From assembly GCA_020891255.1 (NCBI GenBank), contig BQFW01000006.1, positions 1,116,001 to 1,180,000 of the forward strand: a stretch of DNA of 64,000 nucleotides, in the 5' to 3' direction. This document shows positions 6,496 to 14,108 of this stretch, piece by piece. The translations under genes and the position numbers were made by a program. This DNA is from Entomortierella parvispora E1425 (lineage: Eukaryota > Fungi > Mortierellomycota). The notes under the pieces were generated by a model that worked only from the letters and a program-made list of their open reading frames with translations, ran no database searches and was not told where the DNA came from. Every line of letters starts with the position of its first letter. The first letter of the stretch is position 1.

Positions 6496-6504
6496 TAAAA
6501 AAAG
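6496..6504. repeat. Left 9-bp target-site duplication TAAAAAAAG
   Basis: Identical to 14100-14108 and directly abuts the TIR. A 10-bp reading (TAAAAAAAGG) is possible if the terminal base is mismatched. Confidence 0.85.
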
Positions 6505-7525
6505 GAAGCTCTGAACCCAGCCCCTCTTTGCTCACTCCTTCACTTCAGAGGGGCTGGGCGCAAATCTCACCCTTTCCTATGGATGACCCAAAATAATTTT
6601 TTCGTCCAAAAAAGGAAAAAAAATTCTCTGATAAATAGTGTAATTTAAAAACTTTAAATAAATTCACTCTAATAATAATAAAATAGTGAGAGTAATGCCA
6701 GCCATGCAGCCATGCCATCGCTCGTCGCCCGGCTTGAATGGGGTTAATTTCTTCCATTTTTTCATTTTCAATGCCACCACTTTCTTTCATAAACCCCGCG
6801 TTCCGATCTTGCATTCAGCTCCTGCCACCTCTTCTTTATACCCTTCATCTGATTAAATGACAAAGATGGCAAGCAAAAGACCAATCGAGCAGAGGTGAGG
6901 AGACGCGTCTCGGGTGTCCATGATGCTCAGAGTCGCCCACGCGTCCATCTGCTCTATTTTTCTTCATCTCTTCATATTTTCTGTTGTAGTCATGATGCTC
7001 TTAGCAAATCTGATCAAGATATCCCGGGAACGCCGAGAAGATCGCGTAGCACCAAGGTGAGTAGCTTGATGTGGTGCCTGGTGGCCTCTTCCTGGTGTGG
7101 CCTCTTCTAACTCTGTGATTTACAATAGGGTGAGGGACGATTTCGTCTTGATTCCCCAGGTGCTCCTCCGCGAACCCCGCAAACAACACAAACCCCACGA
7201 GCACCACGAGCACCACGAACTCCACGAACCCCGCGCACCTCACAAACCTTACAAACGCCAAGATTCATACAGTCACCAATTGTGGCCAACCAAGTATGAA
7301 AAAAATCGTTAAAAAATATGTGCTGCTCGCGTTTTCTTTTCTAACAGATGTATCCACCTCCTCCCATTCATATCGATTAGGGAACTACCAATGGTTCTGG
7401 TGCTACCGATATGGCCCAACCTTTACCCTTTGTCATGGAGGCACAGGCTCTTTCTCCGACTTCTCAGGCTGCGTACATTGGAGGATCAACGCAATTCAAC
7501 ATTGGAAAAAATTCGACGCCACCCA
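6505..7525 (+). repeat. Left terminal inverted repeat (1021 bp)
   Basis: Reverse complement of 13080-14099. ORF-track entries are mirrored exactly (6545..6814- = 13790..14059+; 7001..7261- = 13344..13604+). The only difference found is a T5 vs T4 run at ~6957-6961. Confidence 0.95.
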
Positions 7526-10500
7526 ACATTGGAAAAGAGTCGCCGCGACCCAGCATTGGAGATGAATCACCGCGACCCAAGCATGCGTCAGAGGAGTCTC
7601 TGCTCGATCCTTTCTGTGACAACACTGATGGAGAGCCATTCGATAGCCCATTCTGGCTTCGGAGATTAGGAAGTAATCGAACAGAGACGCCGATGATATG
7701 GGTTTCTGGGAACGATTACATGAGGACCCCCACAAGAAAAAACTCGCGACGATCTAGGAATCTGAGCACCCCTCAGTTCGCGTAAGCATGAGATACCCCA
7801 ACCTGCCTACCCTGTCGCAACTTTAGTTGCCCCCAGGTTTACGCAAATTTCTAACATGCAGTGAAATTCAGTGATAGGATTAGGACTTTAACGGCCGACA
7901 TGGAGGAGCAGTTCAACTCATCGACACTGCAGGTAAATTCAGCACATGGTTTCGAAAACATCCTTATCGTAATTTATGAATTACCTCTCAAGTGAATTAC
8001 GAATTACGTATAGATGTGCATGCCCGATTCCCCCACACTCAGAGCGACCAATGGAGAGGATCGAATGCCCGGATCAACAAGGAAGCCGCATGTATGTGAA
8101 GACCGGTTGTCCAAAGAAACCAGCAATATGTCACTCCCACAGGCGTCTAACAATTATTTTTCTTTTTAGCATTCCTCTACCCACAAAGTTGCAATGATTC
8201 TTAACTACATCAGGGAACAACAGCTTTCACTTCCCGCCTTCTTCGAGAAGCTGTTTAACTCTCAAGATGAAAACATCAAGCGCTGGACTCATCAATTCTA
8301 TCACAAAGACGGTCCTCGTCGCGTTATCAAAATTTGGAGCCAAAAGTTACGCAAGATCAAAGAATGGGATGCCCCATTTGTGAACAGCGCTGTAGACGTC
8401 GTTGTCTCAAGGACTAAACGGGAGCTTGATCGCCTCAAGAACGGCGTCGTAGGTGACGATGGCCCACACCCAGCCTACCGATTCCCGCACAATAGAATGT
8501 CGGAGGAAAATATCGATAAGATCCTCAGGAACGGGTTTCTCGACTCTTACGCCGGCGAAGCTTCTTTTTTGACACGACTTTTGGACGGCATGCTTAGCAA
8601 GGGAAATGGTACGAACAGTGGCGATGGTAGCACCAGAGTAAACGAAGGCAACAACAACGGCAACGACAGTGAGAACGACACCGAGAGCAACAGCGACAAC
8701 AGCGACAATAGCGGCGACAACGACATCGACAGCAACGGCGATAACACCGTCAACAACGGCAGTGACAACATCGGCAACAATGATGAAGAAACTGTGGGAA
8801 GCGCTACACCTGCTCGCAGGCGCGGTCGAAAACCCAGCTCTGTTCGTGGCTGCATCTCTGCTATGCTCATGTTCTTGAGATCCCAGCAATGCAATGCTTT
8901 TCAGATGGTAATGGGCATCTATCTTCACTGCCTGGGAGCTCCCAGACGAGTTTTAGAGACTTTGTCGGCTCTTGGACTTTGCGTGTCATATGATCAGATT
9001 CACAGGGCATTGAAGGCCTTGACCAAAGACGCACAGGAGAGGGTGAAGGTGGCAGTCCTCAACAACGACTTTTACATTGTATACGACAACATCAACATTG
9101 CCACAAGGCACCATCACCAGAGAGTAGGAAAAAGAGACACGTTCGACAACGGCACAGCTGCTACCGTGATTCTGATTCCCGACAGCTCAAATCTCGGGAG
9201 CTCCAGGAGTGCTGAAATACCTCGATCATCCCCAATGGTTTGCTTCAGAGTGGACAGGCCAGAGCCAAGCGCCAGCATTTTTTTCCCCACAAGCACCGAC
9301 CGCACCATGACTAGGGCTGCCTGCCGCACACATCTGTCGACTGCCATTTCGCAGTTTTTGCCTCGATCACCCAGTGTTTGCGTGATTCCCATGCCGGCCA
9401 TTGACGTACTGAAGGTTGTTAAGACGAAAACTTTTCCATTGCCAACCATGAAGATCGATGAGTCGACTATTGCCGGAAATCTCGCAGTGCTGGAAAACAT
9501 AACAAAGATAGATCTCGGCTTAAGCGATGAATGGTTCAGCAAGACCACCAGGGACATCATAGTGGCCGGTGATCAGATGACTGTCTCTAGACTTTTATCT
9601 CTCAAGGTACACCGCATGGTTGAGTCGGATCCATTCGGCAGTCTTGGTTGGGTACATCCTACGTTTCAGCTCTTCCATCTCCAAATGACACTTTGCTCCA
9701 CGATCTACAAGACACATCTTGGCGCCGATGCCAATACCCCAGGCTCACTTGCATCATTCATTTCCCTATTGGCCAGTAAAGGCTTTAACACGGATAAACC
9801 GGAGTACAAGCCAACCAGTGAACTGCTGAAGATTGTTTTCGACGCAATGTCAATGGTACTCTGGGAAGATCTTCATACCTCAGTGGAGTCTGACATGACA
9901 AGATTCGTTGATCTTGTCATTTACGCCATAGCTAGTCTGCAGCATGCCAATCCCTTGCTCAATGGCCGGCCCTGCACTCCAGCAGATATCAATGCTCTTC
10001 TCTTCCTCCGAGACATGATCGTTTTCATCGAACTCTCTGCTGCTATTAAGGCTGGCGATCTTGGGCGGATAAGATGTGTGCTACCAACCGTGGCATTGAT
10101 GATGCACGGCGGAGGCAATTCCAAATATGCCCTTGAGCTACTACGATTTTCTCCACGGCATGCGCCACCTGTGGACGCGTGAATGGGAACACAGGGTCCT
10201 TTCAAGCATGCTGGTGAACCCTAAAGGCATTCCTCAAGCATGGATGCCAACGGACATGTACCAAGAAATCATCAACTTCCTCCTCAAAGCCACTCATGCA
10301 GCGAAAGGGCCAAACGCAAGCTGGGACTATCTTCGCGAACAAATCTCAACAAACGTCGAGATATTTCAAACCATTGCACGTAATTTCGAACGGGAGATAG
10401 AAACCAAGTACAACAGCACTGCTCACAAAAAACCATCCACGAAAGAGGATGTTGAGCTTGTCAGAGACAATCTCCAGTTCTGTGGAATCCTTTGGGCATC

Positions 10501-10666
10501 CAAGCAAGACACTCGGCCTTCTCCATCCGTGGTAGTTGACCTTCAAACTGTTGGCGCGCACAAAATGGCAGAGAGTGCTATAGCATGTTTTCTCAGAAAA
10601 AGCGATAGCTACGATACTGTGGATATGGAGGAAGTCGAGGCCAACGACCATGTTGTAGCTGAATGA
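6866..10666 (+). CDS. Academ-type DDE transposase (DUF6589-like), ~1098 aa after correcting one frameshift
   Basis: Modelled exons 6866-6894, 6990-7056, 7129-7293, 7381-7781, 7872-7932, 8014-8091 and 8170-10666. Candidate catalytic motifs YIVYDNIN, IVAGDQMT, FHLQM and TDMYQEIIN. A +1 T in TTTT at 10147-10150 splits ORFs 8194..10182 and 10127..10666. The core ORF is solid, while the 5' exons are inferred from splice signals. Confidence 0.8.
7498..7578 (+). repeat. 27-bp (9-aa) minisatellite, 3 units, at the inner edge of the left TIR
   Basis: Units encode NIGKNSTPP / NIGKESPRP / SIGDESPRP. Confidence 0.8.
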
Positions 10667-10832
10667 TATTTTATGACAATAATAATACTAACTAAAGAAG
10701 AATGAATGAATGGGACCTGGGCTCGTGCGATGTTAAATGGCCCGGCCGGCTGTAAATGTTTGGTTGTGCAGGGTCATCAGATGCAAGCAGTGACTCCATC
10801 TCCTTGTCATCTTGGCTCGGTCAATTGATGGG

Positions 10833-13738
10833 CTATTCTTCGACTACCAAGGAATTTTGATCATTTTTCGTACTTTCTATCTCGCCCAGGGCTTTCGCCA
10901 CAACCTCAGCGATCATTTCAAAATGATCGCAATCCACTGGCACAAAATCACAGCTGTCAGCTATCAACCTCACCATTTCAGTAGTGGTGGCCGCAAAGAG
11001 CTTGTAGCACAACCTTGCGAGTACTTTATCGGGCAAAACGCAAAGCTCGAAGTCCACGAAGGACACTTCTTCTCCTGTCCATTTTTTGCACTCGTTCTTC
11101 CTCCACTCCAATAACCTGTTCCTCCCTACATCCTGATCTTTGTCCGCGCTCTTCCCCTTTGGTATAGTCAGTTCGGGCCCAATTTGACCAGTAAGTTCGG
11201 TCGTCTTGCGGCGACAAGACTCACCGAGACATACATCACAACATTTGGTACGAGAGGATATTTTGTTCCCTAGATATTCATCCACCACATGCCACCGACA
11301 TTTCCTCCGACTGTTGTCCTTGTCCTTTTCCTTGTCCTTTTCCTTGTCCTTGTCCTTGTCAATTGGGGGGCAACGAAATTTAAGATGTCAGGTCTCTTGT
11401 TGTATTTCCTGCTGGTAGTTGGAGGCGCCAAGAGGATCCCAAAGCCTTTAGTTCCAGGACCCCTCGCTGCTCGACCGAACCTCTGCACAAGACTCGTCAA
11501 ATCGTGAGGCAGACTTCATATCATTGAAAATATCTTGAAGTAAGTAAGATCGTCTCTCATTTCATCCGCATTGTCCAACCTTAGTTACGTTTCAACTTAC
11601 TCATATTGGAACACAGTGATAACATCTGAGATATCGCATCCCATGCCGCAGGCATCAGTAGCCAACAGGACATCAATCTCGCTATTAATGAACTTGAGCA
11701 GGACTTTATCCTTGGAAGAACTAAGGCGGGTTGAGAAAAATGCGTCCATTCGCAGATCAGGCCTCAATGGCCTTAACTTGTCCTGTACATCTCTGAGAAG
11801 TGCGATGCTGTCAAAATAGACAATCGTCTTTGTATTGTCCAGCAACTTCGCCAGTTGTCTGACTCGATTCCTTAGTGAAAAGGTATGAACTTCGAGCTGG
11901 ATGTTATCACGAATGTCATCCACACGAATGACATGAACGGTGGACGAGGCGAGAAAGACGCTATTCTTGATTTCCTGGAGCGAATCGGGTGGGAGGGTTG
12001 CAGTCAGGCCTACGATCGGCACCCCAGGTACCTTACCACGCAATGATCCAATTTGCGAATAATACGGCCGAAAATCTTTCCATTTATCTACACAGTGGAC
12101 TTCATCTACGACGATGGAGCATAGTTGACTTTTCCAATACTTATTGTTCCAAAGGTCCTGAACCTTGCATGCAGTAGATCCTTTCCCGAAAATGACTTCT
12201 GGCGACATGAACACAGCTCTGTAATGTCCCTCCTTAACTAATTTAATGTCACTGTCGTTAACTCGATTGCCGTTGTAGGTCGAGAGTAGCAAACAAGTGA
12301 CATCCTTTTCTTTGAGTTTCTAGAGTATTAACACAGGGTCGCATTGCGCGATATGTTAGAAAAAGTATACCTGTTAGACTGGTATATTGTATGCTGGCAT
12401 ACCTTTATCTGATCCTGCATCAGGGCAATCAACGGCGAAATGACGACCGTAATCTTGTCCTTCCACATCACCATTGGCAGAGAAAATACAAGTGTTTTTC
12501 CCCACCCGCAGGGCGCAAGCAGTAAGCAATCCTGCTTGTTGTATATATGTTTGACAACACGAAGCTGCTCCTCCTTTGGTGAGTGATGAAAACGCTTTCG
12601 GCAAGCTTGAATAGCCTCTTTACATAATGGATCCTGCAGTATGAAGATTACAGACATATATGCATTTTAATGTGAGAGTTAATGCAAGTCCAGAACATCG
12701 CCATTTCATAATTAAACTCGACTTACCTGGACATCACTCTCGTCTTCGCGTTCATCGCTTTTTTGTATAAACGGTAAAGGTTGGCTAAGAACCGCATTTG
12801 ATGGTGACGAGAATGACTGCAACGGAGAGCCGACAGAATTGGCGGGTGAAGAAGGAGCTGATGACGATGGCTGCATCGATGACCACTTTTTCCTCAAAGG
12901 GGTTCTTACATAATAGTTATCAGAACCCCACGTCATGATTGGTTCTCCATCAGTGTTATCACAGAAAGGATCGAACGTCAACTCCTCCGACGCATTGCTG
13001 GGTCGCGGCGATTCTTCTCCAACATTGGATCGCGTCAAATTCTCTCCAACATTGAGTCGTGGCGGTTCTTCTCCAGTGATGGGTGGCGTCGAATTTTTTC
13101 CAATGTTGAATTGCGTTGATCCTCCAATGTACGCAGCCTGAGAAGTCGGAGAAAGAGCCTGTGCCTCCATGACAAAGGGTAAAGGTTGGGCCATATCGGT
13201 AGCACCAGAACCATTGGTAGTTCCCTAATCGATATGAATGGGAGGAGGTGGATACATCTGTTAGAAAAGAAAACGCGAGCAGCACATATTTTTTAACGAT
13301 TTTTTTCATACTTGGTTGGCCACAATTGGTGACTGTATGAATCTTGGCGTTTGTAAGGTTTGTGAGGTGCGCGGGGTTCGTGGAGTTCGTGGTGCTCGTG
13401 GTGCTCGTGGGGTTTGTGTTGTTTGCGGGGTTCGCGGAGGAGCACCTGGGGAATCAAGACGAAATCGTCCCTCACCCTATTGTAAATCACAGAGTTAGAA
13501 GAGGCCACACCAGGAAGAGGCCACCAGGCACCACATCAAGCTACTCACCTTGGTGCTACGCGATCTTCTCGGCGTTCCCGGGATATCTTGATCAGATTTG
13601 CTAAGAGCATCATGACTACAACAGAAAATATGAAGAGATGAAGAAAATAGAGCAGATGGACGCGTGGGCGACTCTGAGCATCATGGACACCCGAGACGCG
13701 TCTCCTCACCTCTGCTCGATTGGTCTTTTGCTTGCCAT
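10833..13738 (-). CDS. Transposon-encoded RecQ-like SF2 helicase, ~796 aa after correcting one frameshift
   Basis: Modelled exons 13738-13710, 13615-13549, 13476-13312, 13224-12727, 12633-12403, 12319-11601 and 11513-10833. Motifs I APCGWGKT, Ia SPLIALMQDQ, II DEVH, aromatic loop WKDFRPYY, III LTAT, V ATDACGMG, VI QRFGRAAR, and RQC-like Zn motif CRW...CCDVC. A 1-nt deficit falls in the G6 run at 11365-11370. Confidence 0.85.
13000..13107 (-). repeat. 27-bp (9-aa) minisatellite, 4 units, at the inner edge of the right TIR
   Basis: Units encode NIGKNSTPP / ITGEEPPRL / NVGENLTRS / NVGEESPRP. Confidence 0.75.
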
Positions 13739-14099
13739 CTTTGTCATTTAATCAGATGAAGGGTATAAAGAAGAGGTGGCAGGAGCTGAATGCAAGATCG
13801 GAACGCGGGGTTTATGAAAGAAAGTGGTGGCATTGAAAATGAAAAAATGGAAGAAATTAACCCCATTCAAGCCGGGCGACGAGCGATGGCATGGCTGCAT
13901 GGCTGGCATTACTCTCACTATTTTATTATTATTAGAGTGAATTTATTTAAAGTTTTTAAATTACACTATTTATCAGAGAATTTTTTTTCCTTTTTTGGAC
14001 GAAAAAATTATTTTGGGTCATCCATAGGAAAGGGTGAGATTTGCGCCCAGCCCCTCTGAAGTGAAGGAGTGAGCAAAGAGGGGCTGGGTTCAGAGCTTC
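13080..14099 (-). repeat. Right terminal inverted repeat (1020 bp)
   Basis: Reverse complement of 6505-7525. Confidence 0.95.
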
Positions 14100-14108
14100 T
14101 AAAAAAAG
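14100..14108. repeat. Right 9-bp target-site duplication TAAAAAAAG
   Basis: Identical to 6496-6504. Confidence 0.85.

What the first reader, a model, noticed from the sequence alone, without database searches (positions are those of the whole stretch)
6505..13738. Both transposon genes appear to start inside the TIRs and share ~135 identical N-terminal residues and three introns
In the left TIR, ATG 6866 opens a chain of canonical GT-AG introns (6895-6989, 7057-7128, 7294-7380) whose exons join without a stop. They read MASKRPIEQS-HDALSKSDQDIPGTPRRSRSTK-GEGRFRLDSPGAPPRTPQTTQTPRAPRAPRTPRTPR...-GTTNGSGATDMAQPLPF...NSTPP. This continues in frame through three more introns (7782-7871, 7933-8013, 8092-8169) into the transposase ORF. 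The mirror ATG 13738 in the right TIR gives the same leader, which splices in frame (12634-12726, 12320-12402) into the RecQ-like helicase. The one difference found between the TIRs is a 1-bp indel inside intron 1, where it cannot shift the frame. The TIR would therefore be a duplicated promoter plus N-terminal module that gives both proteins matched expression and the same tag. That tag has about ten S/T-P sites (TPRR, TPRA, TPRT) and a basic KRP/RRSR stretch, a possible NLS or CDK-regulated region (inference). I do not know of this architecture being described for Academ elements but could not search.
Basis: partly seen in the sequence, partly recalled or inferred. Interest (0 to 1): 0.9.

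Follow-up and report, generated by a model that had tools for sequence, protein, structure and literature searches.

The report
Transposon genes start inside its repeats
A young, multi-copy jumping gene in the soil fungus Entomortierella parvispora uses its two 1-kb mirror-image ends as duplicate promoter-plus-first-exon cassettes, so its transposase and its helicase are made with the same 138-residue N-terminal tail; RNA data confirm the splicing.

Summary

**The element.** Window 6505-14099 is a 7,595-bp AcademH-type DNA transposon of Entomortierella parvispora E1425. It has a 9-bp target-site duplication and about 11 copies that show no substitutions between them. Its inverted ends are identical for 1,021 nt.

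**RNA evidence.** They also lack one further helicase intron.
- A fully spliced 463-nt leader contig starts at 6809, inside the repeat.
- It overlaps both ends of a 5,102-nt contig that covers both converging genes.
The products are a 1,101-aa DUF6589 transposase and a 799-aa RecQ-like helicase, with 138 identical N-terminal residues.

**Assembly points.** The 1-bp difference between the arms is probably a Nanopore homopolymer artefact, and so are two frameshifts in the window copy.

**Relatives.** Families in Podila verticillata, P. humilis and Linnemannia gamsii also have perfect long repeats whose inner edge lies in an exon open in the same frame on both arms. A Mycena relative has short repeats and diverging genes.

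**Still inferred.** The tail's function (nuclear import or phospho-regulation) and translation from the leader AUG are not shown.

The scan noted the same idea on other copies of this family. Public gene models already start in the repeat, but I found no paper describing it; Kojima 2020 could not be read.

The parts
6496..6504 (.). Left copy of the 9-bp target-site duplication TAAAAAAAG
   Evidence: Read directly from sequence; same 9 nt at 14100-14108.
14100..14108 (.). Right copy of the 9-bp target-site duplication
   Evidence: 9-bp duplications also flank the relatives in L003 and L006.
6505..7525 (+). Left terminal inverted repeat (identical part, 1,021 nt): tip motif, inferred promoter, 5'UTR, start codon, exons 1-3, introns 1-3 and the first 145 nt of exon 4
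   Evidence: identity; spliced RNA contig 6809-7525.
13080..14099 (-). Right terminal inverted repeat, mirror of the left, serving the helicase gene
6505..6526 (+). 22-nt tip motif, identical in elements of three species; likely transposase recognition/cleavage end
   Evidence: Exact matches at both ends of W, L001-L004 and L006; 0 expected by chance in the window.
6516..6558 (+). Subterminal 12-bp palindrome (two inverted GGGGCTGGG-type sites, 19-nt spacer)
   Evidence: conserved in three species with one compensatory change in L006; z -3.4 to -4.9 against shuffles.
6527..6808 (+). Inferred promoter region inside the repeat (mirror 13796-14077)
   Evidence: Among the contigs listed, the leader contig begins at 6809, and the depth bin 6702-6835 is fully explained by that one contig, so nothing lies on 6702-6808. 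Inference only: there is no 5' end mapping.
6857..10666 (+). Transposase gene (DUF6589). Exons 6857-6894, 6990-7056, 7129-7293, 7381-7781, 7872-7932, 8014-8091, 8170-10666. Consensus product 1,101 aa (P0066). The window copy carries one extra T at 10147.
10833..13747 (-). RecQ-like helicase gene. Exons 13747-13710, 13615-13549, 13476-13312, 13224-12727, 12633-12403, 12319-11601, 11513-10833. Consensus product 799 aa. The window copy lacks one G after 11364.
7526..7700 (+). Diverged but homologous continuation of the shared N-terminal region (mirror about 13079-12905). It begins inside a 27-nt tandem array.
   Evidence: I3, I6, I7; local protein alignment, conserved DPFCDNTDGEP and Y.RTP.RK.
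10667..10832 (.). 166-nt gap between the two converging stop codons, covered by the same RNA contig as both genes

Best explanation
**What it is.** This is an active, very young AcademH-type cut-and-paste transposon, with about 11 copies that show no substitutions between them. Each of its two ~1.02-kb terminal inverted repeats is a complete 5' gene cassette.

**Layout of each repeat.**
- The outer ~60 nt carry the conserved tip and a subterminal palindrome, presumably the transposase sites.
- The next ~250 nt act as a promoter (inferred).
- Transcription starts about 305 nt from the tip and reads inward.
- The first AUG (6857, mirror 13747) opens a frame that runs through three spliced introns within the repeat.

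**Products.** On the left the frame continues into a 1,101-aa DUF6589 DDE-type transposase. On the right it continues into a 799-aa RecQ-like helicase. Both proteins therefore carry the same 138-residue N-terminus, which is basic (pI 11.5), proline/serine/threonine-rich and predicted to be disordered.

**What is shown and what is inferred.**
- Shown: the anatomy, the splicing, the reach of both mRNAs into the repeat, and conservation of the arrangement in relatives.
- Inferred: the promoter, translation from the leader AUG, and the tail's role. My best guess for that role is a common nuclear-import and phospho-regulated tag that brings both proteins to the nucleus together.

**How the arms stay identical.** They are probably kept identical by repeated arm-to-arm conversion.
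For: **Anatomy.**
- Repeats and their identity.
- 9-bp target duplication. AcademH makes 9-10-bp duplications (PMC10045372).
- Pfam DUF6589, and DEAD plus Helicase_C.
- Best solved relatives of the helicase are WRN, RecQ and BLM.
- Invariant D576, D738 and E926/E969 in 25 homologues.
- Weak but coherent fold matches to the Hermes, P-element, Transib and RAG1 transposases.

**RNA.**
- All 12 introns are absent from the contigs of run X2, and no X2 contig lies on any leader intron.
- The leader contig spans 6809-7525.
- A 5,102-nt contig runs from 7496 to 13109 with spliced helicase-sense and transposase-sense junctions. Each of its ends overlaps the leader contig by 30 nt.
- Leader contig depth is 112 against 79 for the bodies.

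**Start codon.** 6857 is the first AUG after 6809 and has an in-frame stop just upstream.

**Intact products.** P0066 and the 799-aa helicase.

**Copies.** Copy number is about 11 from DNA contig depths of 77, 839 and 1,627. Four copies differ only by homopolymer indels.

**Relatives.**
- L003 has 827-nt, L006 900-nt and L009 250-nt perfect repeats, each with one frame open across the inner edge on both arms.
- Independent annotations start the transposase (L003) or the helicase (L006, L001, L004) inside the repeat.

**The tail.** Residues 1-272 of the transposase model have pLDDT below 50 and no secondary structure. Composition and 10 S/T-P sites.

**Arm identity.** Repeats of different species are unalignable beyond about 60 nt (50-54% identity against 48% for shuffles), yet the arms within each element are 100% identical.
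Against: - The RNA evidence is assembled contigs, not reads. There is no strand and no 5' end mapping. The assembly graph branches at the repeat edge, so no single molecule is shown to carry leader plus transposase or leader plus helicase.
- The run is labelled 'DNA?' by the tool. I read it as RNA because its contigs are spliced and the genome paper reports RNA-seq of this strain.
- There are no protein data.
- The leader is poorly conserved between species. In the Mortierella alpina relative, only a 2-residue exon of the annotated model lies in the repeat. A long shared coding tail is therefore not essential to the family.
- Membership in Academ was not checked against Repbase sequences.
Confidence: 0.8

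Rival explanations
1. The leader is transcribed and spliced but is functionally neutral. The repeats matter as duplicated promoters and 5'UTRs, as in MuDR. The shared coding tail is a tolerated disordered passenger that appears wherever arm-to-arm conversion happens to spread into homologous 5' coding sequence.
For: - The leader sequence is weakly conserved across species.
- The amount of coding sequence inside the repeat varies widely: 138 aa here, about 57 aa in L003, about 10-39 aa in L009 and about 2 aa in L005.
- The leader is predicted to be fully disordered.
Against: - The frame is kept open through 260-290 codons and 4-6 introns on both arms in several families.
- A PGTP-plus-basic motif and PFW/RTP.RK motifs recur in the leaders of different families.
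- Both proteins need nuclear entry, and no other obvious basic cluster lies upstream of the folded domains except those in this N-terminal region.
Confidence: 0.13
2. Only one of the two genes really uses the repeat-borne start. The mirror copy on the other arm is a silent by-product of repeat homogenisation, and that gene starts at an internal promoter and AUG.
For: - Contigs cannot assign leader RNA to an arm.
- Some public models start the helicase or the transposase internally (L003 helicase, L006 and L009 transposase).
Against: - Both ends of the 5,102-nt RNA contig run from spliced gene bodies through exon 4 into the shared 30 nt.
- The leader contig is deeper than the bodies (112 against 79).
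- The internally started public models lie in the same frame as the open upstream extension.
Confidence: 0.05
3. The long identical repeats, or the whole arrangement, are an assembly artefact of a Nanopore-based genome.
For: The assembly does carry homopolymer-length errors in this repeat family.
Against: - Four copies at different loci have the same structure.
- Independent Illumina contigs reproduce a 989-nt repeat contig at twice the internal depth.
- Three other species, sequenced by other groups, show the same layout.
Confidence: 0.01

Closest known systems
AcademH lineage of the Academ superfamily (Kojima 2020, Mobile DNA 11:15, known to me only through citations; PMC10045372; PMC10799480)
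   Same: - Terminal inverted repeats.
- A DDE-type transposase plus a separate SF2/RecQ-like helicase.
- 9-bp target-site duplication.
- Low-copy presence in Mucoromycota.
   Different: Here, and in related Mortierellaceae families, the repeats are 0.25-1 kb, the two genes converge, and both start inside the repeats with shared exons. A Mycena AcademH-like element (L007) has ~160-bp repeats and diverging genes. I could not read Kojima 2020 to see whether repeat-borne exons are mentioned there.
MuDR, the autonomous Mutator element of maize
   Same: There are two converging genes (mudrA, mudrB). Each is transcribed inward from a promoter in its own terminal inverted repeat, and part of the repeat corresponds to the transcript (PMC8224964, and my own knowledge of the MuDR literature).
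   Different: - MuDR repeats are ~215 bp and, to my knowledge, contribute promoter and 5'UTR only, with no shared coding exons or introns.
- The transposase family is different (no MULE domain here).
- The second gene is not a helicase.
Galileo (P superfamily, Drosophila), recruitment of internal sequence into long repeats
   Same: It has kilobase-scale, dynamically growing inverted repeats. Pieces of the transposase ORF have been recruited into both repeats (PMC4168063).
   Different: In Galileo the recruited piece is the 3' end of a single ORF and its mirror copy is not part of a second gene. Here the repeat supplies working 5' exons to two different genes.
En/Spm (CACTA) TnpA and TnpD
   Same: Two element-encoded proteins share 5' exons (my own knowledge).
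   Different: There the sharing comes from alternative splicing of one transcript from one promoter, not from duplicated DNA at both ends.

Membership tests
AcademH (Academ superfamily) | Target-site duplication of 9 or 10 bp | tested here: met
   TAAAAAAAG at 6496-6504 and 14100-14108. 9-bp duplications also occur in L003 and L006. Criterion taken from PMC10045372.
AcademH (Academ superfamily) | Encodes a helicase in addition to the transposase | tested here: met
   DEAD plus Helicase_C. Best solved relatives are WRN, RecQ and BLM, E 1e-15 to 1e-12. The 799-aa product is supported by RNA-defined exons.
AcademH (Academ superfamily) | Transposase related in sequence to Repbase Academ transposases | not testable with these tools
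   No Repbase sequences are available. Only Pfam DUF6589 matches. Indirect support: DUF6589 is reported as enriched in Puccinia striiformis, in the subphylum where Academ is most abundant.
AcademH (Academ superfamily) | RNase H-like DDE catalytic core | tested here: inconclusive
   D576, D738 and E926/E969 are invariant in 25 homologues. The model core has pLDDT 75-96. The best Foldseek PDB matches are the Hermes, P-element, Transib, RAG1 and ISCth4 transposases, but only at E 0.02-0.1.
AcademH (Academ superfamily) | Terminal inverted repeats | tested here: met
Mutator/MuDR | MULE-type transposase (MURA) | tested here: not met
   The Pfam scan of the transposase ORFs returns only DUF6589. The resemblance is functional (a promoter in each repeat), not membership.
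RecQ helicase family | SF2 core most similar to RecQ-type helicases | tested here: met
   RQC and HRDC domains were not looked for.

The most novel reading that the evidence does not exclude
In Mortierellaceae AcademH elements the kilobase inverted ends form a self-homogenising two-way gene cassette. Frequent arm-to-arm conversion keeps promoter, introns and N-terminal exons identical. Transposase and helicase are therefore co-expressed and carry one common regulated tag (nuclear import, phospho-control or a shared docking site) that is required for mobility. This would be a way of coupling two transposon proteins that has not been described before.
Probability: 0.3. Interest if true: 0.75.

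Novelty: new variant of a known kind. Interest (0 to 1): 0.62.

Why it matters
**New role for the ends.** Transposon ends are normally seen as protein-binding sites, sometimes with a promoter. Here they also carry spliced coding exons that are used twice, for two unrelated enzymes. This is a compact way to give partner proteins the same expression signals and the same N-terminal tag.

**A natural experiment on concerted evolution.** The arms are identical within each element, yet the repeats are unalignable between sister families. The conversion boundary is visible inside a tandem array.

**A tractable system.** The family is expressed, intact and multi-copy in a culturable fungus. It could serve to study Academ transposition, which has never been studied biochemically.

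**A practical point for annotation.** Repeat maskers and gene finders will truncate or split such genes. Nanopore homopolymer errors in repeat families create false frameshifts.

Tried and rejected
- **RNA run search.** A search with host genes and kind 'any' then found the runs.
- **Kojima 2020.** It could not be opened by DOI, PMC id or PubMed id. Prior description of repeat-borne exons therefore remains unchecked.
- **Literature searches.** Searches for the architecture returned nothing relevant beyond MuDR and Galileo.
- **P0010.** This second Podila verticillata family was not on record.
- **Mortierella alpina (L005).** The tips are degraded and no frame is open across the repeat edge. 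It does not support shared coding there.
- **Rhodofomes (L008) and Actinomortierella (L010).** These loci had no inverted repeats in the DNA fetched.
- **Fold search.** The transposase model gave only weak matches.
- **Alternative intron in L001/L002.** I considered the alternative public model P0001/P0062, which splices differently between 7933 and 8170. I rejected it because it follows from an extra C at 8029 in L001/L002 that neither the window nor the read-based contigs carry.
Full report
**Source and setting.** The 662-aa ORF at 8194-10182 is 100% identical to annotated proteins of Entomortierella parvispora E1425, assembly GCA_020891255.1. That genome was assembled from Nanopore reads, polished with Illumina reads, and annotated by AUGUSTUS with hints from stranded RNA-seq of the same strain (PMC8759367).

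**The element.**
- The repeat finder and a gapped alignment show inverted arms at 6505-7525 and 14099-13080. They are identical except for one T in a T-run at 6957.
- Directly outside lie two copies of TAAAAAAAG, at 6496-6504 and 14100-14108. AcademH elements make 9-10-bp duplications (PMC10045372).
- The interior encodes a DUF6589 protein on the plus strand and a DEAD/Helicase_C protein on the minus strand.
- The helicase's best solved relatives are WRN, RecQ and BLM.
- In an alignment of 25 DUF6589 homologues, D576, D738 and E926/E969 are invariant.
- An AlphaFold model has a confident core, and its best PDB matches are DDE transposases (Hermes, P element, Transib, RAG1), though only at E 0.02-0.1.
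- I therefore accept 'AcademH-type', with the caveat that no Repbase comparison was possible.

**Copies.**
- Three other copies (L001, L002, L004), at different loci and with unrelated flanks, differ from the window only by six single-base homopolymer-length differences. There is no substitution in 7.6 kb.
- Illumina DNA contigs of the same sample have depth about 77 on the flank, 839 on the interior and 1,627 on the repeat. That gives roughly 11 copies.
- The Illumina DNA and RNA contigs omit the T at 10147 and add a G after 11364.
- The window copy's frameshifts in both genes are therefore most likely assembly errors. The family consensus encodes an intact 1,101-aa transposase (P0066) and a 799-aa helicase.
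- The arm-to-arm indel at 6957 is of the same kind.

**Splicing and transcription.** Run X2 comes from the same sample. It holds only 28% of the sampled words of a host region, and its contigs lack introns, so it behaves as the RNA-seq library. Four observations follow.
- A 463-nt contig lies on 6809-6892, about 6990-7054, 7127-7293 and 7381-7525. It therefore lacks 6895-6989, 7057-7128 and 7294-7380, and it fits the right arm equally well.
- The binned depths are fully explained by this contig alone, so no unspliced leader contig is present.
- A 5,102-nt contig runs from 7496 to 13109. It lacks 7782-7871, 7933-8013 and 8092-8169, and on the other strand 12726-12634, 12402-12320 and 11600-11514. 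The arithmetic fits: 5,614 - 249 - 263 = 5,102.
- Both ends of this contig overlap the leader contig by 30 nt, which is what a 31-mer assembly graph gives at a branch.

Both gene bodies, in their spliced sense forms, are therefore continuous with the shared exon 4 sequence inside the repeat. No listed RNA contig lies on 6702-6808, which puts the start of transcription near 6809, about 305 nt from the tip. These are contigs, so strand, exact 5' ends and single-molecule linkage are not shown.

**Reading frames.**
- The first AUG downstream of 6809 is at 6857 and is preceded by an in-frame stop. It is the start used by the public models (MTKMASK...).
- From it, both spliced frames are open.
- Random openness of 138 codons has probability about 0.0013, and about 1e-6 for the 260-290 codons upstream of each conserved domain.
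- Past the identical part, the two proteins remain recognisably homologous for about 65 residues. Conserved motifs are DPFCDNTDGEP and Y.RTP.RK.
- Identity between the arms ends inside a 27-nt tandem array at 7497-7584 and 12999-13075.

**Nature of the tail.**
- It has pI 11.5, is 71% P/S/T/Q/G/R/A, and has ten S/T-P sites and basic clusters.
- Residues 1-272 of the transposase model have pLDDT below 50 and no secondary structure.
- A PGTP-plus-basic motif recurs in the N-terminal regions of the four related families inspected.
- Its role as a nuclear-import or phospho-regulated tag is inference.

**Relatives.**

| Species (locus) | Inverted repeat | Duplication and tip | Key observation |
|---|---|---|---|
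| Podila verticillata (L003) | 827 nt, perfect | 9-bp duplication, same 22-nt tip | The transposase model starts in the repeat. The mirrored leader reads open for 185 codons to an acidic patch, then a donor site at the position matching the E. parvispora helicase intron. The annotated helicase Met lies in that same frame. |
| Podila humilis (L006) | 900 nt, perfect | 9-bp duplication, same tip | The JGI helicase model starts at the mirror of a left-arm ATG. One frame is open across the repeat edge on both arms. |
| Linnemannia gamsii (L009) | 250 nt, perfect | not established | One frame is open across the edge on both arms. |
| Mortierella alpina (L005) | 637 nt, 98% | tips degraded | Essentially no coding sequence inside the repeat. 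|
| Mycena (L007) | ~160 bp | not examined | The two genes diverge. |

The arrangement is therefore a lineage feature of Mortierellaceae families. It is not universal to AcademH, and the amount of shared coding sequence varies.

**Arm identity.** Between species the repeats are unalignable beyond the first ~60 nt (50-54% identity against 48% for shuffles), yet within each element the arms are 100% identical. In the window a diverged homologous stretch also follows the identical part. Together these point to arm-to-arm conversion after the N-terminal regions had already diverged, and probably to recurrent conversion. The mechanism is unknown.

**Comparison with known systems.**
- MuDR has a promoter in each repeat driving two converging genes (plus my own knowledge), but no shared exons.
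- Galileo shows recruitment of ORF pieces into long repeats, but not as working exons of a second gene.
- En/Spm proteins share 5' exons by alternative splicing (my own knowledge).
- I found no paper describing repeat-borne shared exons in Academ. Kojima 2020 was not available.
- Public gene models already start in the repeat, so the data exist but the architecture is undescribed in what I could search.

**Earlier scan notes.** The scan's first-stage readers raised the same idea on other copies of this family.

**Verdict.** It is a new variant of a known kind.

Noticed in passing
window 8029, 10147, 11364, 12359, 13643, 13725 (and 6955-6957): All differences among four copies of the element are 1-nt homopolymer-length changes. 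Illumina DNA and RNA contigs disagree with the window at 10147 and 11364. These are likely Nanopore errors that survive polishing in repeats. They split or truncate the public gene models (934-, 940-, 544-, 452- and 281-aa versions of one 1,101-aa protein).
   Followed up: yes
window 6516-6558; L003 9606-9650; L006 6735-6778: A subterminal 12-bp palindrome (CCCAGCCCCTCT, 19-21 nt, AGAGGGGCTGGG) is conserved in three species, with one compensatory T/A swap in Podila humilis. It may be paired transposase sites or a hairpin.
   Followed up: partly
window 6505-6629 and 13980-14099: A separate 120-nt RNA contig covers only the outermost tip, at higher depth (176). It has several different flanks and a different continuation after 6629. 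Run X3 (another sample of the same species label) holds only tip fragments with mismatches. These may be non-autonomous derivatives or host read-through transcripts.
   Followed up: no
window 10667-10832: The two genes converge to within 166 nt, and one RNA contig covers both. The 3' ends may overlap and could give double-stranded RNA. Read-through into the opposite repeat would create a hairpin with the leader.
   Followed up: no
window 7497-7584 and 12999-13075: The inner edge of arm identity falls in a 27-nt tandem array that encodes 9-residue repeats (NIGK.S..P type). The number of units differs between the arms.
   Followed up: partly
window 11314-11360: A (TTGTCC)n microsatellite encodes a (DK/EK)n run in the helicase C-terminal part. 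It lies directly beside the G-run whose length is miscalled in the window.
   Followed up: no
window 8651-8760: A tandem-repeat-encoded N/D/S-rich low-complexity insert (about residues 415-509) sits in the transposase between the helical N-domain and the catalytic core. The related Podila proteins read (P0002, P0003, P0006) have acidic or lysine-rich inserts at the same place.
   Followed up: no
L007 6097-12649 (Mycena olivaceomarginata): An AcademH-like element has ~160-bp repeats, with helicase and transposase genes diverging from the centre. This is the opposite gene orientation to the Mortierellaceae families.
   Followed up: partly
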